Below are positions 241 to 12,511 of a stretch of 64,000 bases of DNA, in pieces. The stretch lies in sequence record PQ471516.1; one strand, written 5' to 3'. The notes beneath the pieces were generated by a model. That model was given only the letters and a program-made list of their open reading frames with translations, had not been told where the DNA came from and did not search any database. Each line of letters begins with the position of its first letter. Positions within the stretch are counted from its first letter, which is position 1. A program made the translations under genes and the position numbers.

Positions 241-254
241 ATATCTTGAATTTT

Positions 255-301: not shown

Positions 302-697
302 TAGTAATTATACGCTTTTTCAGGATCAAGTCAATACCTAAAAACAAAATAATTGAAAATAATTTAACGCGTTTAAACGGCCCGTAAAGCCCTGGAATGA
401 TTGGAATGGTGCAAATGTATAGCTTAGGTGTATTAATGCGTTAGAATGCGTCTGAGGCCGTTTTACGGGGTATAGGGATGATTTGGTGGATTGATTCAGT
501 ACTGAATGATAGTACTACTATATAGAAAGATAGTTCCCCTGGATGGTTGCAGTACTGAATGATAGTTCCCCTATATAGAGAGAAAACTATTTTAAAAGTA
601 CATGTAGAAAGTACTTGCAAACTAAGTTTAACGGCGTATAATGTTTTACATCGAGAGCGGGAACACTTCCCGCTACATATTACGAGAGATTAAAACG

Positions 698-1060
698 ATG
701 GCGACTCAAATCACTAAAATTATTGCTAACCTGGTTAACTTCCGCGACGAGATGAAAGATCTTCCGGCTGAAACGGTAAAAATTCACATCGCAGCTTATC
801 GGGAACTTATTGCAATGTTGCCGCTTAAGCGTGAACAATACGCCGCTACCGTGATGCTTGATGCGATGATCCATAAGATGATCGCCAGTGATTTGACGAT
901 GGTTTATCAGTACATGGGCGAAAAATTCTCGGTGTATAGTAAACCAGTACCAGGAATGGAAAGTACAGAAGTATTACACGGTTTAAATTTAAAACAAGAT
1001 GCATGGGATAATATGCCTCGTTTCCTGGTATGGGCTGACAGTGGCAAAATTTACGAATAA
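698..1060 (+). CDS. Hypothetical early protein
   Basis: ORF track 641..1060; start moved to ATG after promoter, hairpin and RBS. Confidence 0.8.
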   Translation: MATQITKIIANLVNFRDEMKDLPAETVKIHIAAYRELIAMLPLKREQYAATVMLDAMIHKMIASDLTMVYQYMGEKFSVYSKPVPGMESTEVLHGLNLKQDAWDNMPRFLVWADSGKIYE

Positions 1061-1154
1061 GTTTAATAAAGTACTTGCATACTAAGTTAAAACAAGTATA
1101 ATACTTTCTATCAGGTGGGGAATAGTTCCCCACTATAATTAAGAGATTAATTTT

Positions 1155-1388
1155 ATGAGTACTATTTTAACTGTTTCTCAATCCGTTGCACTGACTGACC
1201 TATTAAACGCTTTAAGCCGTTGCACTGAGGTTGGCTTGTTTGATGTGGTTGACGTTGCACCGGACGTTATTAATCATTTTTGTGATGCGATGGAAGAATG
1301 TAAGGAAGATGATAGCCGTATGATGGCGGTCGCCTTTGAGGAAGTACAGCCAGGTGAGATCAAAGGTTTACCAGTACTGAAAAAATAG
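1155..1388 (+). CDS. Hypothetical early protein
   Basis: ORF behind own promoter cassette. Confidence 0.8.
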   Translation: MSTILTVSQSVALTDLLNALSRCTEVGLFDVVDVAPDVINHFCDAMEECKEDDSRMMAVAFEEVQPGEIKGLPVLKK

Positions 1389-1470
1389 TACTTGCAAACT
1401 AAGTTTAAAAGCGTATAATACTTTACATCAGGTGGGGAATAGTTCCCCACTATATAAGAGGATTAAAAAA

Positions 1471-1710
1471 ATGGCTAAATCAAAAATGTTCTTAGGTCAC
1501 AAAAACAAAACTCATTGGAATGTAAGCCTTTGGATTAATAACGATGAGTCATTGTACCGGTTGGCCCAGGACTTTATTAACGATAGCACTAATCGCAATG
1601 ATGCGGCCCGTCATATGATGTTATTTTTAGAACAGACTGGACAAGATAAAACACCGGACGGATTCAAATATAGCACTACTGCGATCCGTGCTGCGATGGT
1701 TGGAATGTAA
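1471..1710 (+). CDS. Hypothetical early protein, paralogue of 3871..4110
   Basis: RBS GAGGA; shares GHKNKTHWNVSLWINN and TPDGFKYSTTAIRAAMVGM. Confidence 0.85.
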   Translation: MAKSKMFLGHKNKTHWNVSLWINNDESLYRLAQDFINDSTNRNDAARHMMLFLEQTGQDKTPDGFKYSTTAIRAAMVGM

Positions 1711-1795
1711 TAGAATTTATTTAAAGTACTATCATTTTTTGCGATAGTACTTTATAATAGTGTTTTATTCATACACCAACGATAAGGGTAACAGC

Positions 1796-2062
1796 ATGAA
1801 TATTAAGTATTTTGCGACGCGTGAACAAGCTCGGATCGCCGCACGCCAGGACGGGGCAACGTTTAAAGATATGGGAGCGGGATCGGCAAGTGGTAAACGT
1901 TGGGCCATTGTAAAGCGTAGTACCGCCAGATCATTACAGTACTGGCTATCTGCTTTAAAGCGTCCTGATAGTGTATCGCGTCGAGTGGTAGAAATAAAGC
2001 ACGACCGCAAGGGCAATCGCGTTACCGTGTACCGTACTAAAAAGATAGCAGTACTTGAATAA
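1796..2062 (+). CDS. Basic hypothetical protein, paralogue of 14694..15098
   Basis: Shares K(Y/F)FATREQARI and HDRKGNRVTVY. Confidence 0.8.
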   Translation: MNIKYFATREQARIAARQDGATFKDMGAGSASGKRWAIVKRSTARSLQYWLSALKRPDSVSRRVVEIKHDRKGNRVTVYRTKKIAVLE

Positions 2063-2149
2063 AAAGTACTTGCAAACTAAGTTTAAAAGCGTATAATGTT
2101 TTACATCGAGAGCGGGAATAGTTCCCGCCTATAACCAGGAGTAATAAAA

Positions 2150-2380
2150 ATGGCTAATATGTATATGACCGAAGTTAAAACCGTAAAAGATACTACCACT
2201 AATAAAACTACTTACTTACAGCGGATCTGTGGTGTATGGCAACGTATCAGCAAATCAAAGTACTTTAAATTAACATCATATGCAAACCGTTCGGATTCAT
2301 TCAGTACTGAAATAAAAGGTAATAAAGTACACCAATACGGCACTTATTATTATTACAGCCTGGACGCGATTGCAGTATAA
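2150..2380 (+). CDS. Hypothetical early protein
   Basis: Promoter cassette, RBS AGGAG. Confidence 0.8.
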   Translation: MANMYMTEVKTVKDTTTNKTTYLQRICGVWQRISKSKYFKLTSYANRSDSFSTEIKGNKVHQYGTYYYYSLDAIAV

Positions 2381-2445
2381 GCAGTTTACAAATCTTTACA
2401 ATTGCCGGTATTGACTTATTTTGTCAGTACTGGCATAATGTATTC

Positions 2446-2490
2446 ATTGGCAGATAAGCCGTAGCCCATAGGGTGCGGGAGTGTATCTAT
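2446..2490 (+). ncRNA. Candidate small RNA, family copy D
   Basis: TTGACT 2411-N17-CATAAT 2434; GGC-AGAUAA-GCC; GCCC-AUA-GGGUGC. Confidence 0.55.
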
Positions 2491-2510
2491 AGAAAAAGTA
2501 GTTTATTACA

Positions 2511-2548
2511 GTTACAATTGTGCACCCGGTGGGTTAGCTGTTGTCATG
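2511..2548 (-). ncRNA. Candidate small RNA, family copy E
   Basis: Minus promoter TTGACA(2583-2578)-N17-CATAAT(2560-2555); ACCC-ACC-GGGUGCACAAUUGUAAC. Confidence 0.55.
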
Positions 2549-2664
2549 GGGTATATTATGCCAGTACTTGATAATGCTGTCAATACTTTTTTTTACTATT
2601 CAGTACAGAAAACTATTTTTAAAAAGTACTTGCAAACTATGTTTAAAGGCGTATAATGTTTTAC

Positions 2665-2739
2665 ATCAGGACGGGGAACGAAATAAGTAACTTCCCGTTA
2701 AGTAGCCCAGGAGTAAGGCACACGAAAAACTCCCCTGAT
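2665..2739 (+). ncRNA. Candidate pseudoknotted RNA motif, copy 1
   Basis: Starts right after promoter 2630-2657; AUCAGG/CCUGAU, ACGGG/CCCGU, pseudoknot GCC/GGC plus GGAG/CUCC. Confidence 0.65.
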
Positions 2740-2806
2740 AAAATAGTTTGACAATTGTTTTTAAAAGCGTATAATACTTACATCGATACTGAATGAGGGT
2801 TACAAA

Positions 2807-3418
2807 ATGAAAACTATCACTACTACTACTTTTGTTATGGCTTTTTCTGAACTGACCGCAGAACAACAAGCGGCGGCTATCGAACTGGTTCGGGAACGTG
2901 AAAAAAACTTAAACGATGATTATTTTTCTGAAAGTGAAATTGAATACTATAAAGAAACAGTACTACCGGAATATGGCATAGATGAAGCTGAATTGCAATT
3001 CAGTGGTTTTTGGTCCCAGGGTGACGGTGCATCAATCAGTACTGACCACGTTGACGCAGTGAAGTTTTTACGCAAGATTAAAGCATTAACTAAGTATCGC
3101 TCGATCCGTCACCTGCTGAATGAAGATGATTTGGCGATGAGTGTAAAGCGTTCTCACTCCCACTACTCGCATGAGAATACTGTAAGCGGGTACATTGAAT
3201 CGGCTTACACTGATTTAACCGCAAAACAAGAAACGTTAGTTAATGAGCTTGAGGAACTACTCACTGAAACTATTCGTGAATTATCCCGCAAGTTGTACCG
3301 TGATTTAGAGAATGCATATGAGGATCAATTCACTACTGAAAACATTACGGCACTGATTGAGGGTAACGAATATCAATTCAATGTCATTGATGGTGTAGTA
3401 GAATCAATCGAATATTAA
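2807..3418 (+). CDS. Acidic hypothetical early protein
   Basis: 203-aa ORF, RBS GAGGG, promoter 2748-2775; FSGFWSQGDGAS segment. Confidence 0.85.
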   Translation: MKTITTTTFVMAFSELTAEQQAAAIELVREREKNLNDDYFSESEIEYYKETVLPEYGIDEAELQFSGFWSQGDGASISTDHVDAVKFLRKIKALTKYRSIRHLLNEDDLAMSVKRSHSHYSHENTVSGYIESAYTDLTAKQETLVNELEELLTETIRELSRKLYRDLENAYEDQFTTENITALIEGNEYQFNVIDGVVESIEY

Positions 3419-3511
3419 TTTAAAAAGTACTTGCAAACTAAGTTTAAAGGCGTATAATACTTTATATCGAGGCGGGGAATGGTTCCCCGCTCACACTAAA
3501 AGGGCAACAAA

Positions 3512-3778
3512 ATGAAAACTTTAAATATCACAACTGCACATCAATTGGTTCGGGATGCGATGGATCATGTGCAAGATTTCTTCCCTGATGTAAGTGTAGT
3601 GACTTATGAAAAAGGTACTTGGACTTATTCAACAATCAACGGTTATGAGCCTGATTTTGATGATCTGGAAGAAATGGAATTTAATTTTGATCTGCTGAAT
3701 GATGCCGCCCGTGAAGTGGAAAACGATGTTCAATACATTGATGGAGTAGTCGCACCTGATGCAGTAAAAGGATTATAA
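3512..3778 (+). CDS. Hypothetical early protein
   Basis: Promoter cassette. Confidence 0.8.
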   Translation: MKTLNITTAHQLVRDAMDHVQDFFPDVSVVTYEKGTWTYSTINGYEPDFDDLEEMEFNFDLLNDAAREVENDVQYIDGVVAPDAVKGL

Positions 3779-3870
3779 AATTTAAAAAGTACTTGCATTG
3801 TAGTTAGATTAACGTATAATACTTTATATCGAGGCGGGGAGTGGTTCCCCGCTCAAACGAGGATTAAAAA

Positions 3871-4110
3871 ATGGCTAGTACTAAAACTTACAACGGACAC
3901 AAAAACAAAACTCATTGGAATGTTTCCTTATGGATTAATAACGGTGAGTCATTGTATCGGCTTGCTCAAAGTTGCATTGCACAAAGTAAAACTAAAGATA
4001 TTGCTGCGGAATGTATGTACCGCAGATTAAAAGCCAACGGTACTACAACCACGCCAGACGGCTTTAAGTATAGCACTACTGCGATCCGTGCTGCGATGGT
4101 TGGAATGTAA
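3871..4110 (+). CDS. Hypothetical early protein, paralogue of 1471..1710
   Basis: Near-identical 3' end at DNA level. Confidence 0.85.
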   Translation: MASTKTYNGHKNKTHWNVSLWINNGESLYRLAQSCIAQSKTKDIAAECMYRRLKANGTTTTPDGFKYSTTAIRAAMVGM

Positions 4111-4168
4111 TATTCAGTACTGAATCAATGGCGGGGAATGGTTCCCGCCTTTATTGAGGGTTTATCTA

Positions 4169-4447
4169 ATGAGTAAAGTAATTAACTATACAGTACTAAG
4201 CAAGTCATTGTCTATAAGTGAGTGCACCAATGGTTTTTGGCTGTACGACGAAACGCGTGGCATGAATTTAGCTATGCAGGAGAAAACTGCTGATGCGGCA
4301 TATCTTAAAGCACTGGAATACTACCAGGAACGTTTGAAGGAAGTAGAAAACAATTATCAAAATTTAAAAGAGAAAGTAGATCATTTCGTCGGTCAATTCG
4401 TTGACGATGACGGGCACTACTGCGACCGTTGCGGATCTTACAGTTAA
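4169..4447 (+). CDS. Hypothetical protein with C-terminal CxxC
   Basis: RBS GAGGG; hairpin 4131-4149 upstream. Confidence 0.75.
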   Translation: MSKVINYTVLSKSLSISECTNGFWLYDETRGMNLAMQEKTADAAYLKALEYYQERLKEVENNYQNLKEKVDHFVGQFVDDDGHYCDRCGSYS

Positions 4448-4464
4448 GTACTGAGGATTATCTA

Positions 4465-4668
4465 ATGAGTGATTTAATTGAACGTATCAAAGAGCTTGAA
4501 GAAAAAGAATTGCAGTTGATCGGCTTACAGAATAAAATCTATCATGATTTGGGGAGTTTTATCAATGCCTGGGATAGTGGCGATCCTGATGCGTTACCTG
4601 CTAACCGCACGGCAATGATCAATGATGTGCGTGGTGTCTTTGATTATGTTTTAAAGCAATTAAATTAA
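4465..4668 (+). CDS. Hypothetical protein
   Basis: RBS GAGGA; start adjusted. Confidence 0.75.
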   Translation: MSDLIERIKELEEKELQLIGLQNKIYHDLGSFINAWDSGDPDALPANRTAMINDVRGVFDYVLKQLN

Positions 4669-4755
4669 AAAAAGTACTTGCAATTAGTTTTTAGTACTGT
4701 ATAATGGTTTACATCAAAGGGAGAAATGGTTCTCCCTGGTAATGAGGAAAATACA

Positions 4756-4977
4756 ATGGCTAATATCACTACTCTTTCCCAACTGGAAGCACTGGTTAAA
4801 TCTATGCGGGAACATGCCGACAAAATCGGCGTACAAGATCCAGCCGTTTGCTTTTGCGACGAATTGAATGATGATACCCTGGTAATAGCAGAAGTCCAGG
4901 ACGTTTCTAACTATTCCTCGCGTTACACTGGCGGCGTAGCAAATAAAGGTGACTTCTGTTTATACCTTACAAAATAA
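4756..4977 (+). CDS. Hypothetical early protein
   Basis: Promoter cassette, RBS GAGGA; start adjusted. Confidence 0.8.
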   Translation: MANITTLSQLEALVKSMREHADKIGVQDPAVCFCDELNDDTLVIAEVQDVSNYSSRYTGGVANKGDFCLYLTK

Positions 4978-4982
4978 CAACG

Positions 4983-5012
4983 CGGGGAGATAATAACTCC
5001 CCGTTACTTTTT
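4983..5012 (+). terminator. Intrinsic terminator
   Basis: CGGGGAG-N7-CTCCCCG plus T-rich tail after stop. Confidence 0.6.
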
Positions 5013-5032
5013 CAGTACTGAATCATTTAATA

Positions 5033-5077
5033 GACGGATCTCGGCACCCGGTGGGTTAGTGACTGTTTCGTCTTGAT
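5033..5077 (-). ncRNA. Candidate small RNA, family copy F
   Basis: Minus promoter TTGACA(5112-5107)-N17-CATAAT(5089-5084); GAC-GAAACA-GUC; ACCC-ACC-GGGUGC. Confidence 0.55.
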
Positions 5078-5220
5078 GTAGTAATTATGCCAGTACTGGA
5101 TGCACTTGTCAACAATTATTTTTCAAATACTTTTTATTAAAATACTTGCAATTAGTTTTTAAACGCGTATAATGTTTTGCATAGGGGGAGCGGTTCCCCT
5201 GGTAACTAAGGAATAAGAAA

Positions 5221-5457
5221 ATGGTCGAACAAATCAAATCAACGTCTTCGAATGTAACGGGAACGGTAGCACACTTTACTAGTGATGAATCGCGGGGCGT
5301 TCCCTATTGTGCTGTACATGTAAACACTGAGGGTAACTACTGGTTTACGGTTTACGGATCATATTCATTTGGACGGCCAGGGCATCAAAAAATTCTGGAT
5401 AAAGTACAGCCAACGGGTAAAAATATCACTGCTGAAATGTTTTATAAAAAATCATAA
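5221..5457 (+). CDS. Hypothetical early protein
   Basis: Promoter cassette, RBS AAGGA. Confidence 0.8.
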   Translation: MVEQIKSTSSNVTGTVAHFTSDESRGVPYCAVHVNTEGNYWFTVYGSYSFGRPGHQKILDKVQPTGKNITAEMFYKKS

Positions 5458-5542
5458 AGTACTTGCAATTAGTTTTCAGTACTGTATAATCTTTTACATC
5501 GACACGGGAAAACGGTTTCCCCTGGTAACTAAGGATAATCAA

Positions 5543-5842
5543 ATGAAAGTTGCAATCATCGCCCTGGCTTTATCTGTATCGTCTTTCGCTGTTAACGCTT
5601 CCGTTGATGTACCGCGTGAAAAATTCATTCAGTGCACTGTTGCAATGACTAACGAGGAAACGGCTGAGATCGTTACCAAATCCCTGGAACTGGCCCCTGC
5701 GATGTTTGCCAATGGCCCGTATCATGAAGAAGATGATCAGGGTAGCACGACCATCTATTACGATGCAAAAAGTAAACGCGGTTCAGTTACTGTAATGGAT
5801 ACTGAGAAAGTTACATTCACGGGAGTAATTAATTGTTTTTAA
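5543..5842 (+). CDS. Exported protein with signal peptide
   Basis: MKVAIIALALSVSSFAVNA fits a Sec signal peptide; RBS AAGGA; start adjusted from 5369. Confidence 0.7.
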   Translation: MKVAIIALALSVSSFAVNASVDVPREKFIQCTVAMTNEETAEIVTKSLELAPAMFANGPYHEEDDQGSTTIYYDAKSKRGSVTVMDTEKVTFTGVINCF

Positions 5843-5858
5843 TGAAGTACTGAATCAT

Positions 5859-5887
5859 AAGCCCACTATAAGAAGTGGGCTTTTTTT
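5859..5887 (+). terminator. Intrinsic terminator
   Basis: AAGCCCACT-N6-AGTGGGCTT plus T tract. Confidence 0.8.
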
Positions 5888-5964
5888 ATTGTAGTACTGA
5901 ATACTTTAAAAATAGTTTTGAAATAGTAGTTGACATTACCAGGGAAAGGCGTAGAATGTATTAC

Positions 5965-6027
5965 ATCAGGACGGGGAACACTAAGTAGACCGCCAGTAAG
6001 TCGAACGAAAAACTGGACACGACCTGG
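5965..6027 (+). ncRNA. Candidate pseudoknotted RNA motif, copy 2 (divergent)
   Basis: After promoter 5930-5957; UAAGUA GAC CG CCAG UAA GUC GAACGAAAAA CUGG. Confidence 0.6.
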
Positions 6028-6072
6028 AAACTTTGATAAACTAAATTACACTTTAATTGAGGAATTAAAAAA

Positions 6073-6552
6073 ATGGCAAATGTAAAATCATTCTTTAAAG
6101 CACTGGTATCTTCTGACGTATCTATCGCCGCTGAATTGCTGGCTGACCTGGATAATGATACCATGAAAGCAGTACGCAATAATTTTAATATGGCGTACAG
6201 TGCAGCAAAAGAACTGCAAGCCAAAAAGGTAGCAGAACTGGAAGCGGCAAAGGCAGAACGTGAAGCAGAACTGCAAGCAACAATCGAAAGCATCCAGGCG
6301 GCGGTAAGTGGATTGGATATCGAGATCGTAACCGATATGGCACATAAAGCCCTAGCTGCAAAATACGGTGAAGTAAAAGCGGTTAAAGAAAAGAAATGGA
6401 TTCAGGACCGCGTTAACGTAGTACTAGACAACGGGGAAGAATATCTTATTCCTGTACGCGGTAACTGCATTGCCGTAGTACTGGACGCGATTAACTCCAG
6501 TGGTATGACACGCGAGGAATGGATCGAAGCTCATCGCAAAGTTGAAGCATAA
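6073..6552 (+). CDS. H-NS-like protein (coiled coil plus H-NS-type C-terminal domain)
   Basis: Ala/Glu coiled coil; C-terminal NGEEYLIPVRGNCIAVVLDAINSSGMTREEWI aligns without gaps to E. coli H-NS [32 protein letters not shown] (from memory). Confidence 0.55.
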   Translation: MANVKSFFKALVSSDVSIAAELLADLDNDTMKAVRNNFNMAYSAAKELQAKKVAELEAAKAEREAELQATIESIQAAVSGLDIEIVTDMAHKALAAKYGEVKAVKEKKWIQDRVNVVLDNGEEYLIPVRGNCIAVVLDAINSSGMTREEWIEAHRKVEA

Positions 6553-6573
6553 CAATAAAAGTACTGAATCACT

Positions 6574-6600
6574 AGCCCACCTTAAACGGTGGGCTTTTTT
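6574..6600 (+). terminator. Intrinsic terminator
   Basis: AGCCCACC-N6-GGTGGGCT plus T tract. Confidence 0.8.
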
Positions 6601-6837
6601 GTGTTTATCGTTTACCAGGCCACCAGCACCGCCTAGAAACGATTCTAACGCATTAAACTGATTATCCGATGCATTGCCCTAGCTGGTGGCGTTAAGGCTG
6701 TAAGAACGCGATTGAGAGCGTTTAAAGTATTTTGCAAAAAGTAATAAAAAGTACTTGCACGATTAAGAGATTAGCGTATAATGTTTTACATCGAGAGGGG
6801 GAAACGGTTCTCCTTCCAAATCAAAGGAATCAAAACA

Positions 6838-7065
6838 ATGGCTATTATCATTACTCGCGTATCTGGTACTACTGGCAACGAACAAGTAGTTGCAGTCATT
6901 ACCAACAAGGAAGGTGCGGAATTGCAAAATGCAATGAATACCTGGGCCGTTAATGAGTTCGGTCAGTGGGCAAGTGTAGCATACATTGAAACCTATCAAG
7001 TGCCGTCGATTAGTTTAACTGATTTGGGCGTTGAGCGTATCCTTTGCCTTGATGAATTAAATTAA
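6838..7065 (+). CDS. Hypothetical early protein
   Basis: Promoter cassette; start adjusted. Confidence 0.8.
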   Translation: MAIIITRVSGTTGNEQVVAVITNKEGAELQNAMNTWAVNEFGQWASVAYIETYQVPSISLTDLGVERILCLDELN

Positions 7066-7151
7066 AAAAGTACTTGCAAAGTAAATCGAATAAAGTATAA
7101 TACATTACATCAAGGGGAGAAAATGGTTCTCCCCACTACAAGGAAACTAAA

Positions 7152-7295
7152 ATGAAAACTTGTCAATGTGGTCAGAAATCTATTACGGGTTTAAAGCGGG
7201 GCGTTGCTCTTTGCCAGTACCATTATAATTTACAAGTATGGGGTAAAGAATGGGCCGACCAGGTGGAAGCAATCAAGAAAGCAAAAAGTAAGTAA
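7152..7295 (+). CDS. Small Cys/His protein (47 aa)
   Basis: Own cassette, RBS AAGGA; CQCG...CQYH; below ORF-track cutoff. Confidence 0.7.
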   Translation: MKTCQCGQKSITGLKRGVALCQYHYNLQVWGKEWADQVEAIKKAKSK

Positions 7296-7374
7296 AAATA
7301 TTATCACAGTGCTATTGACATAGTTTGATAGTACTGGCATAATAGATTTTATCAAGACAACTGAGGAAAATAAA

Positions 7375-7587
7375 ATGGCTATCATTACTAAAATCAAAGT
7401 AAACAAATCACTGGTTAAGCTGGAAGAAGTGAAAGCAGGTTATAAAGTATCGTGGTGCGGTATGTATCGGATGTTCGCAGATATTGATGAAGCGATCAAT
7501 TATTACAGCGACACGGTTAAAAACTTTGTTCGTGCTGATGTGGTTATGGCAGTGGTAACGCACAAAGCAGCGAAAGAAAGTAAGTAA
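7375..7587 (+). CDS. Hypothetical early protein
   Basis: Promoter, RBS GAGGA. Confidence 0.8.
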   Translation: MAIITKIKVNKSLVKLEEVKAGYKVSWCGMYRMFADIDEAINYYSDTVKNFVRADVVMAVVTHKAAKESK

Positions 7588-7676
7588 AAATATTATCACA
7601 GTACTATTGACATAGTTTGATAGTACTGGCATAATAGATTTTATCAAGACAACATATTAATTTAAGGAATACAAAA

Positions 7677-8000
7677 ATGGCTAAAACTATCATTAACACC
7701 GTTTCCCTGGCTGCAATCCGTGCAATCAATGTTGACGGTAAACGTTGGACTGATTCATATGGCAATACTTATCATTCTTGTCATGTAAGCGTTGAACTGG
7801 ATAACGGTTTGAATGATCTGGCGGTTGAATCATTTACTTATGGCTATGAAGATGCATATCAACAAACGGCGTTAGATCTCTTAAAGGAATCAGTAGACGG
7901 GCTTAATACTGATGAAACCTCCCTTACTCGTTTGTGCAATGATCTTAATATCCCGTTGCATTGTACTGTACAGAATGTTAAACGCAAAAAAGATCTTTAA
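7677..8000 (+). CDS. Hypothetical protein, paralogue of 14280..14603
   Basis: Shares RWTDS(Y/H)GNTYHSC and FTYGY. Confidence 0.85.
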   Translation: MAKTIINTVSLAAIRAINVDGKRWTDSYGNTYHSCHVSVELDNGLNDLAVESFTYGYEDAYQQTALDLLKESVDGLNTDETSLTRLCNDLNIPLHCTVQNVKRKKDL

Positions 8001-8080
8001 TTAGCTTTACTTTATGCAGATACTTTGATATAGTGTCTGCATAGGGGAAAGAAATTAAATTAACTTAAGAGGATCGTATA

Positions 8081-8350
8081 ATGAAAAATATCAGTACTTT
8101 AATCGATGCAGGTACACATGTTCGGCGGTCAATGGTTGCAACCAGTACTACAAAACAAGTAGCGAGCGGTTATCTTGTATTTGTGCACGATGGTAAACTC
8201 CTGGAACGTTCAATCAATTTTGATGTTAAAAACAATTGCCGTTTTATTATCTTTAAGCGTGAGCAATATAAAATTGATTTACCAGCAAAGCCCATTAGTG
8301 GGGCGTACAACGTGCAATCATTGTTTGAACGTCAACCATACACCTATTAA
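8081..8350 (+). CDS. Hypothetical protein
   Basis: RBS GAGGA. Confidence 0.7.
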   Translation: MKNISTLIDAGTHVRRSMVATSTTKQVASGYLVFVHDGKLLERSINFDVKNNCRFIIFKREQYKIDLPAKPISGAYNVQSLFERQPYTY

Positions 8351-8401
8351 TCAAAACATCGTTAGCGGTCGATTTAGGCCGCTTATATTGGGGATTATAC
8401 C

Positions 8402-8674
8402 ATGAACGTTAATCAAGTACTGAATGAGATCGAAAGCATCATTAAACCGATGAAGCGTACTGATGCTATGTTAACACCGGAAGAATGCCGCCTTTATGAG
8501 CGTTACAGCGTCGAACAAGTCCAGGCGATGGCTATGGCTACCCCAGCCGTTAAACCGCCTGAGAATGCGTTACAGGACGTTACAGGGGATTATATCATCA
8601 ATCCAGTACTAGGGAAGATGGCTGCAATCACCGAAGATCAACAAGACTACTTAAGCCAGTACTTAAAAGGTTAA
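8402..8674 (+). CDS. Hypothetical protein
   Basis: ORF track, operon context. Confidence 0.7.
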   Translation: MNVNQVLNEIESIIKPMKRTDAMLTPEECRLYERYSVEQVQAMAMATPAVKPPENALQDVTGDYIINPVLGKMAAITEDQQDYLSQYLKG

Positions 8675-8679
8675 TTAAT

Positions 8680-8889
8680 ATGCTTACTGTACAGGATAAG
8701 ATCGACATCTTAAAGGTTAATATGTATGTGATTGATGCAGTACCTGGTAAAGTATTTGCATACGATGACACCACTGTAAGCGATTTCTACTATAGCCAGG
8801 ACGTGGGGGATCTTTCTGTACAGTCGGTTATTGAAAACGTAGTTAATGCAGCGTATGAGCATTTACTTTCAAATAGTACTTGCAATTAG
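8680..8889 (+). CDS. Hypothetical protein
   Basis: ORF track, follows previous gene. Confidence 0.7.
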   Translation: MLTVQDKIDILKVNMYVIDAVPGKVFAYDDTTVSDFYYSQDVGDLSVQSVIENVVNAAYEHLLSNSTCN

Positions 8890-9185
8890 TTTTTAAACGC
8901 GTATAATGTTTTACATGAAGGGGAGAAATGATTCTCCCCACTAATTAAGGAATATGAAATGAAAGCATCAAAAAAGAGTAATACTAAGAAAGCACGTTCA
9001 CCTTTCGCTGGGGTATTCCCTTTACGTTTCGTTGATGAAGTAGTTTCCTACCCGCCGGGCCTTACTCCTGAGATGGTAGAAAGTTTGCGTAAATCTAAAA
9101 AATAGTACTTGCAATTAGTTTTTAAACGCGTATAATGTTTTACATGAAGGGGAGAAATGGTTCTCCCAATAACAGGAGAATCAAA

Positions 9186-9338
9186 ATGAAACAATACAAC
9201 GCTCGGTTTGATGTTACTATCGGTAACGGCAAAGGTCAATTCTCTTTCAGTACTCGCAAAAGTTATACAGAAAACTTCCTGCGTAATTGTGCACTGACCG
9301 CCGCACAAATTAAACATTATTTTCAGGCTAAAAAATGA
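9186..9338 (+). CDS. Small hypothetical protein
   Basis: Promoter cassette, RBS AGGAG; start adjusted. Confidence 0.7.
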   Translation: MKQYNARFDVTIGNGKGQFSFSTRKSYTENFLRNCALTAAQIKHYFQAKK

Positions 9339-9573
9339 AAACATTAGCTTACTATAGTTCGGCCCTGGTCGGTGCATTGATCGCGGCGTTGTTAGTAACC
9401 TATCTATTCTTTATGGTGATTTAAATGAATCCAACAGGTTTAAACTATAAAAGTTGTTCGGCGTTTACGAAAGCAAATAAAGCGAATGCACGTAAAGCGA
9501 AAGTACAGGAATACATCAAGCAAGGCATGACGCGAAAGGCGGCGATTCTAAAAGCTAAAAATAAATGAAAAAA

Positions 9574-9606
9574 GTGGTTGACTCCGGTCAGCCATTTTGC
9601 TATTAT
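9574..9606 (+). promoter_or_regulatory. Palindromic terminator-like element overlapping the promoter of sRNA copy G (also 13315-13349, 16619-16654, 18881-18916)
   Basis: NGG(A/T)TTGAC-TC(C/A)G-GTCAG..CCN then TTT(T)GC-TATTAT; TTGACT-N17-TATTAT with TG extension. Confidence 0.7.
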
Positions 9607-9611
9607 ATATT

Positions 9612-9660
9612 CATTGAGAGATAGCTCACTAGCCCACAGGGTGCATAAGTGTATCTATTA
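9612..9660 (+). ncRNA. Candidate small RNA, family copy G
   Basis: UGAG-AGAUAG-CUCA; GCCC-ACA-GGGUGCAUAAGUGUAUCU; no ORF. Confidence 0.6.
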
Positions 9661-9778
9661 TATAATGTTTGAGTACTGAAAACTATTTTTAAAAAGTACT
9701 TGCAAACTATCTCAATAAGCGTATAATGTTTTACATCGAAAGGGGAAACGGTTTCCCCTGGTAATAAGGAAACAAATC

Positions 9779-10120
9779 ATGACTATCTCAATTGCTCAAT
9801 CTAACTTTGAAAATGAAATCATCGCCCAGGCACTGCGTTTAAATGATGGTCGGGCCGAAATTAATTACGGTTTCAATTCAGGCGGTTGCGAAAACTATCA
9901 GTACTTTGTAACGGCTGATGGCGGTGTCCTGGGTATCAATACAGTTATTGTAAACATCCAAAAAATTAATTTCAATGATCCAGACGATAGCCAGTTTTAC
10001 ATCACTGGCGTAGACGTGAACTATGAGGATGACTCACTAACTGATGATCACACTGGCGAGCGGTTAGAAAGTGCATACGGTGAAGATGATTATCAGTCCG
10101 GTCCAGAAGATTTCGAATAA
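9779..10120 (+). CDS. Acidic hypothetical early protein
   Basis: Promoter cassette, RBS AAGGA. Confidence 0.8.
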   Translation: MTISIAQSNFENEIIAQALRLNDGRAEINYGFNSGGCENYQYFVTADGGVLGINTVIVNIQKINFNDPDDSQFYITGVDVNYEDDSLTDDHTGERLESAYGEDDYQSGPEDFE

Positions 10121-10216
10121 TATAAAAAAATAGTTTGACAATAGATTATAGTACTGTATAATAGTTTACATCAAGGGGAGAAAAACTTCTCCCCACTAAC
10201 AGAGAGAGAAAACAAA

Positions 10217-10429
10217 ATGGCTAATATCCGGTCGAAATTAAAAAATGCAAAACAAGTTTTATTTTCAGATCATGAATACTTTAATAAAGATATTACAGGA
10301 GTTACAAGTATCAAGGAAGTAAAAGAAAAAACCGGCGTTTTGTGTGATGTGCGATTAGTTGGGACATTTGGGAATAACGTGCTATATCGCTGCGGTGATT
10401 ACAATTTTACACTGACTATCATTAACTAA
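10217..10429 (+). CDS. Hypothetical early protein
   Basis: Promoter cassette. Confidence 0.75.
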   Translation: MANIRSKLKNAKQVLFSDHEYFNKDITGVTSIKEVKEKTGVLCDVRLVGTFGNNVLYRCGDYNFTLTIIN

Positions 10430-10512
10430 AAATATTATCACAGTACTATTGACATAGTTTGATAGTACTGACATAATAACTTTTATCAACTACACTACTA
10501 AGGAATTAAAAA

Positions 10513-10692
10513 ATGGCTATCATCGCAAAAACTGAAATCGTTGGTCTGGATTCTATCATCATGACGTTTGAAGATCAAAAAGGTATGTATGTAGTTTCCT
10601 ATGGTGATTATGTTCGGGAGTATGAAACGGTAGACGAAGCCTTTGAAAGTTATATTCGCCAGGTGAATAAAGCATACGACGACTACCGCTAA
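10513..10692 (+). CDS. Small hypothetical protein (59 aa)
   Basis: Promoter 10449, RBS AAGGA; below track cutoff. Confidence 0.7.
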   Translation: MAIIAKTEIVGLDSIIMTFEDQKGMYVVSYGDYVREYETVDEAFESYIRQVNKAYDDYR

Positions 10693-10791
10693 AATATATT
10701 ACCAGTACTATTAAATCTATTGACAACGTTTGATAGTACTGTATAATAAGTTTTATAAACAGTAGTTAACTTAACCTAAGAGAGAAACAAA

Positions 10792-10935
10792 ATGATCGCA
10801 CTGGATTCATTCATCGACGCAGTACTGGCAAAAACTGGCGAGGATCTGACCGCAGAACAATACGCGATGATCGAGCAATGTCAGCAAAACGGTAAATCGG
10901 TGAAAGATACTGTTAAGATTATCCGCAAGATGTAA
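10792..10935 (+). CDS. Small hypothetical protein (47 aa)
   Basis: Promoter 10720; terminator-like hairpin 10942-10968 follows. Confidence 0.7.
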   Translation: MIALDSFIDAVLAKTGEDLTAEQYAMIEQCQQNGKSVKDTVKIIRKM

Positions 10936-11040
10936 TATTATAGCCCACTGGTTAACGCTGGTGGGCTTTAATCATTTACCCTATACAATGCCAGTACTCA
11001 ACCGTTTATCTCGTTAGAATGCGTTACAGGACGTTTAACA

Positions 11041-11238
11041 ATGATTAGCATGAAATCAGTACAAAAACAAATAGAAACATTATCAAAAATTAAACGTAAA
11101 CAGTACTCGTTAGAATATACAATCAATGGTAACTATCATCTAATGAAAGAAAATAATTTTATAGTCATTGATGAATCATTGCAAATTATTAGTATAGTAC
11201 TGAAAGCATTAATTAATGATAGAAAAAAATTAAAATAA
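11041..11238 (+). CDS. Hypothetical protein
   Basis: ORF track; AT-rich, weak RBS. Confidence 0.45.
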   Translation: MISMKSVQKQIETLSKIKRKQYSLEYTINGNYHLMKENNFIVIDESLQIISIVLKALINDRKKLK

Positions 11239-11276
11239 TTGTTGACATACAATGCCAGTACTGGCATAATACTTAC

Positions 11277-11325
11277 ATCAAGACGAGAACGTCACTAACC
11301 CATAGGGTGCACAAATGTAACTATA
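11277..11325 (+). ncRNA. Candidate small RNA, family copy H
   Basis: TTGACA 11242-N17-CATAAT 11265; GACG-AGAA-CGUC; ACCC-AUA-GGGUGCACAAAUGUAAC. Confidence 0.6.
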
Positions 11326-11566
11326 TAACATCGATCAATAAATGATCAAAAAAGTACTGGATCAATTTAGCATAAGGAGTATAATTCTGATCAATTCTTG
11401 TTCAAAGGCAATATACGCAGTTGAATTTATATAGACAGTACAAAGGCGTTACTATCCGTGGTAATGCTGGTGGATATGTAGTATCATATGGTTTGAATAA
11501 GATTAGCACTAGTAGTATTATTGTAGCATTACAGTACTATAGTATTTTTATAATGAGGTTAAAATA

Positions 11567-11824
11567 ATGGCTGTAGGATTTGCGAAGGACGGGGCCGAAC
11601 AAGACGAGATTAACGCAGTGATTCAGGCCGCTGTAAACCACGCTAGAAAGCAAATTAACGCACAAAGAGAATCACTGGTACATTGCCTCGACTGCGGCGA
11701 TAAAATCCCTGAGAATCGACGCCAGGCCGTTATAGGGTGCATGTATTGTATTACTTGCCAGGAGGATCATGATAGTACTTTTAAACGTCAACCGCGTAAT
11801 TGTTGGCATAGATCTATGAGATAA
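11567..11824 (+). CDS. DksA/TraR C4-type zinc finger protein (YbiI-like)
   Basis: CLDCGDKIPENRRQAVIGCMYCITCQ; N-terminus resembles YbiI. Confidence 0.9.
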   Translation: MAVGFAKDGAEQDEINAVIQAAVNHARKQINAQRESLVHCLDCGDKIPENRRQAVIGCMYCITCQEDHDSTFKRQPRNCWHRSMR

Positions 11825-11887
11825 AAAGTATTGACAGTACTGTTAGATAATGTATAATAGTTTACATCTTATCTGAGGATTGAAATC

Positions 11888-12244
11888 ATGGGTATACAAC
11901 ATATCACGCGTACTACTGACAACGGCGAGATCACTGGTTATCAAGTACAGGGCAAAGTAGCACAATTGCAGTACTGGTTTGTTAAACGTGGAATCATTGC
12001 ACCGGATCTTGATTATGACCGTGTAGCGTTTATTGATTCTCTTTATGTTGATCCTGATAGTCGGGGCAATGGTGAAGGTAACGAATTAATGAATGCCTTT
12101 ATCGATGCCGCCGATGATTCAGATTGTATCATCTTAGAATGCGATACGGGAGAAGATAACGCCTTCAATCTTAAAGAATGGTACGAAGGTTTCGGATTCG
12201 AGGTACTGATCGATAGTGAATATCCTATCATGATTTTATCATAG
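11888..12244 (+). CDS. GNAT-family acetyltransferase
   Basis: IDSLYVDPDSRGNGEGNELM acetyl-CoA motif A. Confidence 0.85.
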   Translation: MGIQHITRTTDNGEITGYQVQGKVAQLQYWFVKRGIIAPDLDYDRVAFIDSLYVDPDSRGNGEGNELMNAFIDAADDSDCIILECDTGEDNAFNLKEWYEGFGFEVLIDSEYPIMILS

Positions 12245-12322
12245 TACTTGCATTTAGTTTTCAGTACTGTTATAGTACTTACATCAAGGGGAAACATCTT
12301 CCCCTACTAAGAGGAAATAAAA

Positions 12323-12511
12323 ATGGAAAACTTATCAAGTATTTTAGTACAAGATGATTTCGGTAATCCTGGAAGTGCTATCATTGTTCGGGGCAATAAA
12401 GCAACGTTTGTTATTGCTGGTGGACCCGTACAGCGTAGCATTAAAAATAATGCTGTTACCATTAATAATGTACGCTATCGCTTAGATAAAGAATTAATTC
12501 ATAAACTGTAA
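12323..12511 (+). CDS. Hypothetical early protein
   Basis: Promoter cassette, RBS GAGGA. Confidence 0.8.
   Translation: MENLSSILVQDDFGNPGSAIIVRGNKATFVIAGGPVQRSIKNNAVTINNVRYRLDKELIHKL

What the first reader, a model, noticed from the sequence alone, without database searches (positions are those of the whole stretch)
6073..6552. H-NS-like protein with an altered DNA-binding hook
Seen: long coiled coil plus a C-terminal segment that aligns gap-free with the H-NS DNA-binding domain (NGE, G, AV[VI], A, G, [ST], acidic pair, aromatic). The TWTGQGR minor-groove motif is replaced by YLIPVRGN. Established: H-NS silences AT-rich foreign DNA, and phages counter it (T7 gp5.5, T4 Arn/MotB). Inference: a dominant-negative or re-targeted H-NS protecting the AT-rich arrays downstream; also a candidate AGTACT binder.
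Basis: partly seen in the sequence, partly recalled or inferred. Interest (0 to 1): 0.7.

Follow-up and report, generated by a model that had tools for sequence, protein, structure and literature searches.

The report
Divergent H-NS-like protein of jumbo phage
A giant E. coli phage carries, near the end of its genome, a very diverged copy of the bacterial DNA-coating silencer H-NS with a rewired DNA-contact loop; it probably helps the AT-rich phage DNA escape or replace host silencing, but this has not been tested.

Summary
The ORF is real (6073-6552, + strand, 159 aa). The window is the first 64 kb of Escherichia phage Turkey5, a 351-kb Rak2-like jumbo phage. Pfam, NCBIfam and PDB sequence searches see nothing. 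Profile-profile comparison of the phage family with an H-NS family alignment gives a collinear 87-116-column match: probability 85-92% with the wider family alignments (58% for the Turkey5 genus alone), P 5.6e-7 to 6.3e-6, score about 42 against about 11 +/- 2 for shuffled columns. It covers the H-NS site-2 dimerisation turn, the linker and the whole C-terminal domain. An AlphaFold model of that domain has the H-NS order of elements, and 1HNR is rank 3 of 350,542 PDB chains (not significant). The hook is altered: Q-G-R becomes R-G-N, and G-N is invariant in 21/21 relatives. Asn at that position is what MvaT uses to enter the DNA minor groove, so the loop looks rewired rather than dead. However, linker plus domain are acidic, unlike H-NS. 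The gene is among the first at the genome end in all Rak2-like phages and has its own sigma-70 promoter. Function is untested. Verdict: new variant of a known kind.

The parts
5845..5886 (+). Upstream terminator cassette (AAGTACTGAATCA..AGCCCAC-loop-GTGGGC-T6) that ends the preceding gene
   Evidence: Terminator scan finds a stem at 5859-5882. It is 83% identical to the cassette at 6559-6600 (repeat family D16).
5930..5957 (+). Sigma-70-type promoter, TTGACA-16 nt-TAGAAT (11/12 match), preceded by an A/T-rich tract
   Evidence: It is a diverged member (69%) of the repeated early promoter cassette D2. Equivalent promoters lie about 100 nt upstream of the homologs in phAPEC6, K64-1, CBB and XbC2.
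5964..6072 (+). Inferred 5' leader of about 110 nt; RBS GAGGA at 6059-6063
   Evidence: Read from the sequence. No unusual folding: z = 0.06. The first ~70 nt resemble leaders at about 2655-2745 and 13475-13560. The transcription start is inferred, not mapped.
6073..6552 (+). CDS of the H-NS-like protein, 159 aa plus stop (phrog_27871)
6076..6144 (+). Residues 2-24: two short N-terminal helices, in the position of H-NS alpha1-alpha2 (site 1)
   Evidence: AF2 full-length model predicts H2-12 and H16-24 at low confidence (pLDDT 66-68). Two relatives give a sub-threshold Pfam Histone_HNS_N hit; the best is P0027 residues 18-70, E 2.1e-4, 21.5 bits against a cut-off of 24.5.
6154..6303 (+). Residues 28-77: long A/E/K-rich helix, in the position of H-NS alpha3
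   Evidence: AF2 predicts H28-77. hhalign aligns phage 42-79 to H-NS 30-66.
6310..6369 (+). Residues 80-99: Gly turn (G80-L-D-I-E) plus helix alpha4, aligned to the H-NS site-2 dimer-dimer element (G69-I-D-P-N-E-L...)
   Evidence: hhalign. G80 is conserved in at least 90% of the family. This is one of the best-conserved segments, mean pairwise identity 0.44.
6370..6408 (+). Residues 100-112: linker, the least conserved segment, and not basic
   Evidence: Mean pairwise identity 0.21. Linker plus C-terminal domain has net charge -2 and pI 5.3, against +2 to +7 and pI 9-10 in bacterial and plasmid H-NS.
6409..6534 (+). Residues 113-154: C-terminal domain, beta-hairpin (113-117, 123-127) plus two helices (134-143, 147-154)
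   Evidence: AF2 model of the domain alone: pLDDT 78.8, core blocks 82-87. An independent BFVD model of a 40%-identical homolog superposes at 1.3 A. 1hnr is rank 3 in the PDB search, TMt 0.46, E 1.5. hhalign domain-only P = 5e-4, with 0/200 shuffles reaching the score.
6451..6471 (+). Residues 127-133, P-V-R-G-N-C-I: the 'hook' loop opposite H-NS T110-G-Q-G-R-T-P116. G130-N131 (6460-6465) are invariant in the family
   Evidence: G-N in 21/21 sequences. It is the most conserved segment, 0.47. N131 maps to H-NS R114 and MvaT N100 (PMC4466236).
6559..6600 (+). Downstream intrinsic terminator cassette (stem 6574-6595 followed by a T run)
   Evidence: family D16.

Best explanation
The gene encodes a very diverged member of the H-NS superfamily. 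It is conserved in all Rak2-like jumbo phages of about 350 kb. It keeps the H-NS layout: two short N-terminal helices and a long helix (self-association), a Gly turn plus helix matching the H-NS site-2 dimer-dimer contact, a linker, and a beta-hairpin/helix/helix C-terminal domain with a loop of the same length at the same place as the H-NS DNA hook. The tip of that loop is R-G-N (x-G-N across the family) in place of Q-G-R. Asn at this position, working with an Arg at the start of the first strand, is how MvaT enters the DNA minor groove. Proposed mechanism (inferred, not shown): host RNA polymerase transcribes the gene from its own sigma-70 promoter directly after injection. The protein oligomerises and may also co-assemble with host H-NS or StpA. 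It then contacts AT/TpA-rich phage DNA with a changed preference. In this way it would act as the phage's own H-NS-type coat or counter-silencer, so that host H-NS does not shut down the 36% G+C genome. My confidence by step: H-NS-superfamily ancestry about 0.8; the loop is a functional binding site about 0.7; the ligand is DNA about 0.5; the purpose is counter-silencing about 0.4.
For: Homology: hhalign of the phage family against an H-NS family alignment gives probability 88.4%, P 2.8e-6, score 42.8, 109 collinear columns. It is robust: the enlarged 21-sequence family gives 86%, the family without the Turkey5 genus 85%, the Turkey5 genus alone 58% over 116 columns, and an H-NS set without phage-record sequences 92% with P 5.6e-7. 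Nulls: column shuffles score 10.5-10.9 +/- 2 with a maximum of 18.8 (0/300 reach the observed score), and reversed profiles score 19-21. Each half alone gives the same register: C-terminal domain P 5e-4 (0/200 shuffles), N-terminal part P 3.7e-3. Four H-NS glycines that are invariant or near-invariant in alignment A3 coincide with conserved phage glycines: G69=G80, G104=G121, G113=G130, G127=G144. Pfam Histone_HNS_N hits two relatives just below threshold. Fold: the domain model has pLDDT 79 and the H-NS order of elements; 1hnr is rank 3 of 350,542 chains with the highest TM in the list. Loop: it is the most conserved segment and G-N is invariant. MvaT N100 is structurally equivalent to H-NS R114, and R80/N100 are required for DNA binding (PMC4466236). 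Phage R113 is present in at least 90% of the family and sits next to the R80 column. Position 137 (= H-NS K120 = MvaT K105) is K or R in nearly all genera other than Turkey5's; the RaK2/K64-1-type members carry an insertion there and cannot be scored. Timing and place: near-consensus sigma-70 promoter and own terminators; the same arrangement occurs in four other genera. The gene is gene 1 in XbC2 and fHe-Yen9-03/04, and gp003 inside the 22.5-kb terminal repeat of CBB. It lies in annotated terminal repeats in fENko-Kae01 and vB_Ec-M-J. The CBB authors place RpoD-type promoters in the early and terminal-repeat regions (PMC5259590).
Against: No sequence-to-profile method detects H-NS: Pfam PF00816 gives no hit at E<=10 in any of 15 members, NCBIfam gives only noise, PDB sequence and profile searches return no H-NS chain, and tblastn of H-NS against all phages at E<=10 misses these phages. 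The Foldseek match to 1hnr is not significant (E 1.5, TM below 0.5); the other H-NS-type solved domains are not in the top 50. The full-length model is poor (pLDDT 66.5). I compared profiles only with families I chose (H-NS, MvaT), so there is no database-wide ranking. The H-NS idea itself came from the same C-terminal similarity. Against DNA binding: linker plus domain is acidic (net -2, pI 5.3; family -4 to +2) where H-NS is +2 to +7. W109, G111 and R114 of H-NS are all replaced. In Turkey5's genus the K120/K105-equivalent is Leu. The similarity to MvaT itself is not significant (P 0.077). There are no experimental data for any family member. K64-1's 'DNA-binding protein' label has no stated basis.
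Confidence: 0.45

Rival explanations
1. Poison subunit or decoy. The protein joins host H-NS/StpA oligomers through its H-NS-like N-terminal and site-2 parts. Its own C-terminal domain does not bind DNA, so mixed filaments cannot bridge or silence. This would resemble H-NST or truncated H-NS, and be functionally similar to T7 gp5.5.
For: The site-2-like turn plus alpha4 is one of the best-conserved segments (0.44) and aligns to H-NS residues 57-83. The basic linker is lost and linker plus domain is acidic. H-NS R114, W109 and, in this genus, K120 are replaced. Dominant-negative action by N-terminal H-NS fragments and by H-NST is established (PMC7074111). The early promoter and genome-end position fit a host-takeover factor.
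Against: A pure poison subunit needs no C-terminal domain (H-NST has none). Here the domain, and especially its loop, is the most conserved part, with an invariant G-N. Identity to the H-NS N-terminal region is only about 16%, and the N-terminal-only profile match is weak (P 3.7e-3, probability 9%). The family also occurs in a Xanthomonas phage, whose host H-NS-like proteins differ from the enterobacterial ones.
Confidence: 0.25
2. Sequence-specific reader of AGTACT. The rewired R-G-N loop recognises the palindrome AGTACT, which has a central TpA step and is spread at about 4 copies per kb over the phage genome. Binding there would nucleate a phage-specific nucleoprotein coat or regulate the early promoters that contain the motif.
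For: AGTACT occurs 275 times against 20 expected in the window (13.5x); the next palindromic hexamer reaches only 2.3x. It occurs in all three reading frames within genes, so selection acts on the DNA. It is also enriched 18-26x in K64-1, phAPEC6, CBB and XbC2, all of which carry the protein family. PA5oct, with no detectable homolog (three tblastn queries), has 0 copies in its first 12 kb against 3 expected. The motif is built into the early promoter cassette twice. MvaT-type pincers prefer flexible TpA-step DNA and tolerate G:C pairs (PMC4466236).
Against: All carriers belong to one clade, so the co-occurrence amounts to one evolutionary contrast, based on 12 kb of PA5oct. H-NS-type domains are low-specificity minor-groove binders, and a 6-bp palindrome usually implies a dimeric major-groove reader. 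These genomes hold hundreds of other uncharacterised proteins that could read the motif. The gene's own promoter lacks an exact AGTACT. There are no binding data.
Confidence: 0.1
3. Not an H-NS relative. It is a phage-specific coiled-coil protein with a small beta-beta-alpha-alpha domain that resembles H-NS by chance or convergence, and it acts in something unrelated, for example as a protein-protein adaptor.
For: All sequence-to-profile and sequence-to-PDB searches are negative. Foldseek gives no significant hit; RBD and ubiquitin-like folds rank 1-2. Pairwise BLAST E is only 0.043, and the whole-protein shuffle test is not significant. A/E/K-rich helices attract spurious matches: head scaffold, TolA and FliH all appear as noise. 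Small domains of about 45 residues have few possible topologies.
Against: The profile-profile score is about 15 SD above column-shuffled nulls and twice that of reversed profiles, which keep composition and periodicity. The same register is recovered from each half independently and from sub-families that share no close relatives. The match is collinear over two different structural modules. Four conserved glycines coincide. The score (42.8) far exceeds that of the accepted H-NS/MvaT pair under the same conditions (21.9).
Confidence: 0.2

Closest known systems
H-NS / StpA of Enterobacterales (Pfam PF22470 + PF00816)
   Same: Similar length (159 against 137 aa). Same order of modules: alpha1-alpha2-long alpha3, Gly turn plus alpha4 (site 2), linker, beta-hairpin/helix/short helix. 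A collinear profile-profile match runs from H-NS residue ~30 to 137. Conserved glycines coincide, and the loop has the same length and position.
   Different: The Q-G-R hook is R-G-N. W109 becomes I, G111 becomes V and K120 becomes L. The linker is not basic, and linker plus domain is acidic. It fails the Pfam and NCBIfam thresholds. It is encoded by a lytic jumbo phage and sits among the first genes at the genome end.
MvaT / MvaU / TurB of Pseudomonas
   Same: Gly-Asn at the tip of the DNA-contact loop (MvaT G99-N100 = phage G130-N131). There is an Arg near the start of the first strand (MvaT R80; phage R113 sits in the adjacent alignment column). A basic residue on the first helix (MvaT K105) is present in most phage genera.
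   Different: The profile similarity is not significant (P 0.077). The MvaT loop is two residues shorter than that of H-NS (PMC4466236), whereas the phage loop has the H-NS length. MvaT lacks the two extra N-terminal helices (PMC6936261), which the phage protein appears to have. Turkey5 lacks the lysine network.
H-NST and truncated H-NS (dominant-negative antagonists)
   Same: Horizontally carried H-NS relatives that could interfere with host H-NS through the oligomerisation domain (PMC7074111).
   Different: H-NST consists of the N-terminal domain only. The phage protein keeps a strongly conserved C-terminal domain.
Ler (an H-NS-type C-terminal domain used as a counter-silencer)
   Same: It is an H-NS-family protein whose role is to relieve silencing rather than impose it, which is a precedent for the proposed role (PMC7074111).
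   Different: [quoted passage not shown] The phage protein instead resembles H-NS over its N-terminal part as well, and its hook tip is changed. I made no direct comparison with a Ler sequence.
Previously reported phage-encoded silencer homologs (EPV1 H-NS; Lsr2 of actinophages and CgpS) and plasmid 'stealth' H-NS (Sfh, Pmr)
   Same: They are silencer homologs carried by mobile elements (PMC3097231; PMC7074111).
   Different: The EPV1 hns is described as closely related to the host's own hns. The plasmid H-NS sequences aligned here keep the canonical hook. This phage family is too diverged for standard annotation and has its own conserved hook variant.
Phage anti-H-NS proteins T7 gp5.5, T4 Arn and MotB
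   Same: They have the same presumed goal, which is to stop H-NS acting on AT-rich phage DNA.
   Different: To my knowledge (not tested here) they are not H-NS homologs. Nothing in my searches linked this protein to them.

Membership tests
H-NS family (PF22470 + PF00816) | [quoted passage not shown] | tested here: not met
   No PF00816 hit at E<=10 for Turkey5 or any of 15 relatives. NCBIfam gives only noise.
H-NS family (PF22470 + PF00816) | N-terminal dimerisation site 1 (alpha1, alpha2 and the start of alpha3) | tested here: inconclusive
   AF2 predicts helices 2-12, 16-24 and 28-77 in the H-NS order, but at pLDDT 66-70. PF22470 hits 2 of 15 members below threshold; the best is 21.5 bits against 24.5. 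The main hhalign match starts only at H-NS residue ~30.
H-NS family (PF22470 + PF00816) | Central dimer-dimer site 2 (end of alpha3, Gly turn, alpha4; H-NS 57-83) | tested here: met
   Met at profile level only. Phage 70-99 aligns to H-NS 57-86 with G80=G69 and matching hydrophobic positions. The same register appears in the N-terminal-only comparison, P 3.7e-3. The segment is well conserved. Physical dimerisation was not tested.
H-NS family (PF22470 + PF00816) | Basic flexible linker with a positively charged C-terminal half | tested here: not met
   Linker plus domain has net charge -2 and pI 5.3 in Turkey5, and -4 to +2 across the family. The 12 bacterial and plasmid H-NS sequences have +2 to +7 and pI 9-10.
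H-NS family (PF22470 + PF00816) | C-terminal fold: beta-hairpin, alpha-helix, short helix | tested here: inconclusive
   The model (pLDDT 79) has that order of elements. hhalign domain-only P is 5e-4, above 200/200 shuffles. 1hnr is rank 3, but with E 1.5 and TM 0.40/0.46.
H-NS family (PF22470 + PF00816) | Q/R-G-R AT-hook-like motif within T-W-T-G-Q-G-R-T-P | tested here: not met
   The phage has L-I-P-V-R-G-N-C-I. Only the central Gly (and, in this genus, an Arg at the first position) is retained. The R114 equivalent is Asn in 21/21 family members.
H-NS family (PF22470 + PF00816) | Binds AT-rich DNA, forms filaments or bridges, silences transcription | not testable with these tools
   This needs EMSA, ChIP and reporter assays.
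MvaT/MvaU family | AT-pincer: Arg at the start of the domain plus a Gly-Asn loop (R80, G99-N100) | tested here: inconclusive
   G130-N131 align to G99-N100 and to H-NS G113-R114, which agrees with the published structural equivalence N100=R114. R113 is one column from R80 in a low-confidence alignment.
MvaT/MvaU family | Lysine network (K81, K83, K97, K102, K105, K108) | tested here: not met
   In Turkey5 the K105 equivalent is L137 and the domain is acidic. Most other genera keep K or R at that one position.
MvaT/MvaU family | Family-level sequence similarity | tested here: not met
   hhalign of the phage family against 8 annotated MvaT/MvaU genes: score 16.3, P 0.077, probability 0.7%.
H-NST-type truncated antagonists | Consists of the oligomerisation domain only, with no C-terminal domain | tested here: not met
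   A full C-terminal domain is present and is the best-conserved part.
H-NST-type truncated antagonists | Forms heteromers with host H-NS and derepresses proU and bgl | not testable with these tools
It needs a two-hybrid assay and reporter assays.

The most novel reading that the evidence does not exclude
This family reads a clade-wide DNA signature. An H-NS-fold protein with a hybrid H-NS/MvaT hook (R/x-G-N plus R113) preferentially binds the palindrome AGTACT, which all Rak2-like jumbo phages carry at 13-26 times the expected frequency (about 4 per kb, in genes and in every early promoter). The protein is made first after injection. It would nucleate a phage-specific nucleoprotein coat that marks self DNA, excludes host H-NS and perhaps nucleases, and tunes early promoters. 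For jumbo phages that build no phage nucleus, this would be a protein-coat alternative.
Probability: 0.1. Interest if true: 0.85.

Novelty: new variant of a known kind. Interest (0 to 1): 0.6.

Why it matters
H-NS silences AT-rich incoming DNA. It is not known how non-nucleus-forming jumbo phages, with 350 kb of roughly 35% G+C DNA, deal with it. This finding offers a diverged H-NS relative that is conserved across the whole Rak2-like clade, sits among the first genes at the genome end and has its own sigma-70 promoter. That makes a concrete candidate that can be tested in E. coli K-12 with phages such as Sharanji. It would also be a natural intermediate between the H-NS (Q-G-R) and MvaT (R...G-N) ways of reading the minor groove, on an otherwise H-NS-like scaffold with an acidic DNA-binding half. 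That is informative for how silencer specificity evolves. In practice, dozens of 'hypothetical protein' entries (phrog_27871, phrog_20181) could be re-annotated. The clade-wide AGTACT over-representation is unexplained and, as far as my literature searches show, undescribed. It deserves study in its own right.

Tried and rejected
- Pfam, NCBIfam and PHROGs scans of the protein and 15 relatives gave no named function. The sub-threshold hits to RNase_H, Tox-PL-2, Sf6_terminase, DUF3846, head scaffold, TolA and FliH were judged helix or composition noise.
- PDB sequence searches with the single protein and two family profiles gave nothing. The best match was an ApeA defence protein at E 0.066, and no H-NS chain appeared.
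- Foldseek with the full-length model gave only noise, because the model is poor and dominated by helix.
- Foldseek against the viral library found only members of the same family.
- tblastn of H-NS against all phage records found no Rak2-like phage.
- A structured or regulatory 5' leader was rejected: folding z = 0.06 and no Rfam hit.
- 'Virion protein injected with the DNA': the phAPEC6 homolog gp528 is not mentioned in the main text of the virion proteome paper. The supplements were not checked.
- Specific membership of the MvaT family was rejected, because the profile similarity is not significant.
- Neighbouring genes give no functional context; all belong to PHROGs of unknown function.
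- 'Protects AT-rich arrays downstream': the arrays are repeated early promoter/leader cassettes, and no specific link to this gene was found.
Full report
**What is there.** The window is identical to bases 1-64000 of Escherichia phage Turkey5 (PQ471516.1, 351 kb), a member of the PBECO4/121Q group of jumbo phages. ORF 6073-6552 (+ strand, 159 aa) is real. It forms its own transcription unit:
- a near-consensus sigma-70 promoter, TTGACA-16-TAGAAT, at 5930-5957;
- an inferred leader of about 110 nt, with no unusual folding (z = 0.06);
- a GAGGA ribosome-binding site;
- two paralogous terminator cassettes bracketing the gene, at 5845-5886 and 6559-6600.

The surrounding 14 kb is an array of at least 19 repeated promoter/leader cassettes, each driving a small ORF of unknown function.

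**The observation.** By shuffling, the alignment is unremarkable for the whole protein (360/3000) but unusual for domain against domain (3/3000).

**Standard annotation sees nothing.** Pfam at E<=10 gives no H-NS domain. PHROGs assigns phrog_27871, of unknown function. NCBIfam gives noise. PDB sequence searches with the protein and with family profiles return no H-NS chain. tblastn of H-NS against 50,697 phage records at E<=10 does not find these phages.

**The family.** Word-indexed searches found only close relatives. The exhaustive HMM search of 1.84 billion representatives added 13 distant ones, and a third search added three more. tblastn shows the family in every genus of the Rak2-like jumbo phages: 121Q/PBECO4, RaK2/K64-1, GAP32, CBB, Munch/SE_PL/fENko-Kae01, Serratia BF, Yersinia fHe-Yen9-03/04, Erwinia pEa_SNUABM, Hallingskeid/Kaldavass and Xanthomonas XbC2. 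No homolog was detected in the related Pseudomonas phage PA5oct.

Where records start at the physical genome end, the gene is one of the very first:
- gene 1 in XbC2 and fHe-Yen9-03/04;
- gp003 in CBB, inside the 22.5-kb terminal repeat;
- inside annotated direct terminal repeats in fENko-Kae01 and vB_Ec-M-J.

A strong sigma-70-type promoter about 100 nt upstream is conserved in four other genera. The CBB paper places RpoD-type promoters in the early region and the terminal repeat (PMC5259590). Sharanji, a close relative, has a 20.7-kb terminal repeat and lacks the chimallin (chmA) gene of nucleus-forming phages, so its authors infer that it may not build a phage nucleus (PMC11895373).

**Test of H-NS homology.** The distant relatives have a C-terminal consensus (F.RV.V.V.G.EYEMP..GNM...LKDAV..SGL.R.DFI) that looks more like H-NS than the Turkey5 copy does. 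I built an H-NS family alignment from annotated genes: E. coli hns, six plasmid H-NS genes, two from phage records and four database proteins. hhalign of the phage family against this alignment gives probability 88.4%, P 2.8e-6, score 42.8 over 109 collinear columns. The match runs from the long helix, through the Gly turn plus alpha4 (phage G80-LDIE on H-NS G69-IDPNE, the site-2 dimer-dimer contact), across the linker, to the end of the C-terminal domain.

Controls:
- Column shuffles within each half score 10.5-10.9 +/- 2, with a maximum of 18.8 (0/300 reach the observed score).
- Reversed profiles, which keep composition and helical periodicity, score 19-21.
- Each half alone recovers the same register: C-terminal domain P 5e-4 (0/200 shuffles), N-terminal part P 3.7e-3.

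The result survives changes to the alignments:

| Comparison | Probability | Note |
|---|---|---|
| 21-sequence family vs H-NS | 86% | score 41.7 |
| Family without the Turkey5 genus | 85% | score 41.4 |
| Turkey5 genus alone | 58% | 116 columns |
| H-NS set without the two phage-record sequences | 92% | P 5.6e-7 |

As a yardstick, the accepted H-NS/MvaT relationship scores only 21.9 under the same conditions. Two relatives also give a just-sub-threshold Pfam hit to the H-NS N-terminal domain; the best is 21.5 bits against a cut-off of 24.5. Caveats: I could compare only with families I chose, so there is no database-wide ranking. The hypothesis also originated from the same C-terminal similarity.

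**Structure.** The full-length model is poor (pLDDT 66.5). It predicts helices 2-12, 16-24, 28-77 and 83-98, which is the H-NS order alpha1, alpha2, long alpha3, alpha4 (PMC6936261). A model of residues 100-159 built with 16 diverse fragments is better (pLDDT 78.8, core 82-87). It shows strands 113-117 and 123-127 and helices 134-143 and 147-154. An independent database model of a 40%-identical homolog superposes on it at 1.3 A. Against the PDB nothing is significant, as expected for about 45 residues. Even so, 1hnr, the H-NS DNA-binding domain, is rank 3 of 350,542 chains. It has the highest TM-score in the list (0.40/0.46) and covers 43 of its 47 residues. I treat this as weak support.

**The hook.** Residue mapping:

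| Phage | H-NS | MvaT |
|---|---|---|
| I126 | W109 | |
| P127 | T110 | |
| V128 | G111 | |
| R129 | Q112 | |
| G130 | G113 | G99 |
| N131 | R114 | N100 |
| C132 | T115 | |
| I133 | P116 | |
| L137 | K120 | K105 |

G130-N131 are invariant in 21/21 relatives, and R113 is present in at least 90%. The loop is the most conserved segment of the whole protein (mean pairwise identity 0.47), ahead of the hairpin (0.45) and site 2 (0.44). The linker is the least conserved (0.21). So the loop is a functional site and not a decayed one.

The published MvaT-DNA structure shows that:
- MvaT has an H-NS-like fold with loop KGGNH;
- N100 sits where H-NS R114 sits, and R80 takes the place of Q112;
- R80 and N100 form an 'AT-pincer' in the minor groove, helped by a lysine network;
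- R80A, N100A, K105A and K108A abolish function (PMC4466236).

Real MvaT/MvaU genes fetched from Pseudomonas plasmids carry ...KGGNHK.LKEWK.... The phage family is not a MvaT family member (P 0.077). It is an H-NS-like scaffold with an H-NS-length loop that carries the MvaT-type Asn. Position 137 is K or R in nearly all genera other than Turkey5's; in the RaK2/K64-1-type members an insertion makes that column ambiguous. Turkey5's genus has Leu there, but has an Arg at the first hook position (R-G-N).

Against DNA binding: linker plus domain is acidic to neutral in the phage family (Turkey5 net -2, pI 5.3; range -4 to +2). It is strongly basic in every bacterial and plasmid H-NS examined (+2 to +7, pI 9-10). 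The basic linker is known to matter for H-NS (PMC7074111; PMC6936261). Rok, however, manages with a neutral linker.

**Mechanism.**
- *Shown:* the sequence features, the family distribution, the genome-end position, and the promoter and terminators.
- *Inferred:* early transcription by host RNA polymerase; oligomerisation through the H-NS-like N-terminal part; ligand binding through the conserved loop.
- *Most likely reading (0.45):* a phage H-NS-type DNA-coating or counter-silencing protein with changed DNA preference.
- *Main rival (0.25):* a poison subunit that co-assembles with host H-NS. The charge data favour this, but the strong conservation of the C-terminal domain disfavours it.
- *Not H-NS-related at all:* 0.2.
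- *AGTACT-specific reader:* 0.1.

**AGTACT.** The motif is 13.5-fold over-represented in the window (275 against 20), and no other palindromic hexamer exceeds 2.3-fold. It occurs in all three reading frames within genes and twice in each early promoter cassette. The enrichment holds in K64-1, phAPEC6, CBB and XbC2 (18-26x) but not in the first 12 kb of PA5oct (0 against 3), which has no detectable homolog of the protein. It rests on a single clade-level contrast, so I do not count it as evidence of binding.

**Literature and novelty.** In the held library, none of the 20 listed papers on Rak2-like phages mentions H-NS. The papers that mention both jumbo phages and H-NS concern other matters. 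Phage-encoded silencer homologs are known, such as EPV1 H-NS and the Lsr2 homologs of actinophages. H-NS antagonists are also known, such as H-NST and Ler. K64-1's copy is labelled 'DNA-binding protein' with no stated basis. I therefore class this as a new variant of a known kind. It is moderately interesting in itself, and more so if it connects to the AGTACT signature.

Noticed in passing
whole window; also L010 (K64-1), L011 (phAPEC6), L012 (CBB 1-40000), L021 (XbC2 1-11346), L022 (PA5oct 1-12000): The palindrome AGTACT (the ScaI site) occurs 275 times in the window against about 20 expected (13.5x); the next palindromic hexamer reaches 2.3x. It lies in all three reading frames inside genes (82/41/58) and is twice as dense between genes. 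The same 18-26x excess is seen in K64-1, phAPEC6, CBB and XbC2, but PA5oct has 0 against 3 expected. My paper search found no description of this for these phages.
   Followed up: partly
window 600-14000 (for example 2616-2666, 4659-4750, 8861-8952, 9681-9772, 12798-12889): There are at least 19 copies of a promoter/leader cassette of about 50-92 nt: AAAAAGTACTTGCAA-N16-TATAAT (often AGTACTGTATAAT, giving an extended -10), then TTACATC, a GGGGAGAAA..TTCTCCCC-type hairpin and an RBS. Almost every small early ORF has one. A sub-class has a true TTGACA -35 (10135, 10720, 11831, 13566, 13925).
   Followed up: partly
window 2616-2810, 5916-6075, 13436-13640: Three loci share a leader of about 70 nt after the promoter (ACATCAGGACGGGGAAC...TAAGTAG.CC...AGTAAG...ACGAAAAACT). 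In two of them a second TTGACAAT-N-TATAAT promoter follows. Upstream of the H-NS-like gene that second promoter is degenerate. Its function is unknown.
   Followed up: partly
window 1432-1710 and 3871-4110: Two paralogous small proteins (92 and 79 aa; DUF7249, phrog_871) share GHKNKTHWNVSLWINN.ESLYRLAQ...TPDGFKYSTTAIRAAMVGM. Their DNA is 80-92% identical at a spacing of 2400 nt (repeat families D12 and D17).
   Followed up: no
whole window: Several 6-bp palindromes are completely absent: CCATGG, CAGCTG, AGGCCT, AGCGCT and CCCGGG (0 observed against 1.5-7.6 expected). This suggests avoidance of restriction sites.
   Followed up: no
window 20194-20353: A perfect tandem duplication of an 80-nt A/T-rich unit containing one AGTACT (2.0 copies, 100% identity). 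It lies at the edge of a stretch (about 20300-23200) that has no AGTACT.
   Followed up: no
window 7285-7361, 7577-7653, 10419-10495: A 77-nt repeat in three copies (99% and 84% identical) carries a different promoter type, TTGACA-N17-CATAAT, with a TG extended -10 and AGTACTGGCATAAT.
   Followed up: no
window 1-64000: The first 64 kb holds no tRNA genes and no Rfam family at gathering threshold. G+C falls from about 0.39 in the first 20 kb to about 0.34 beyond. Cumulative GC skew rises steadily, consistent with nearly all genes lying on the + strand.
   Followed up: yes
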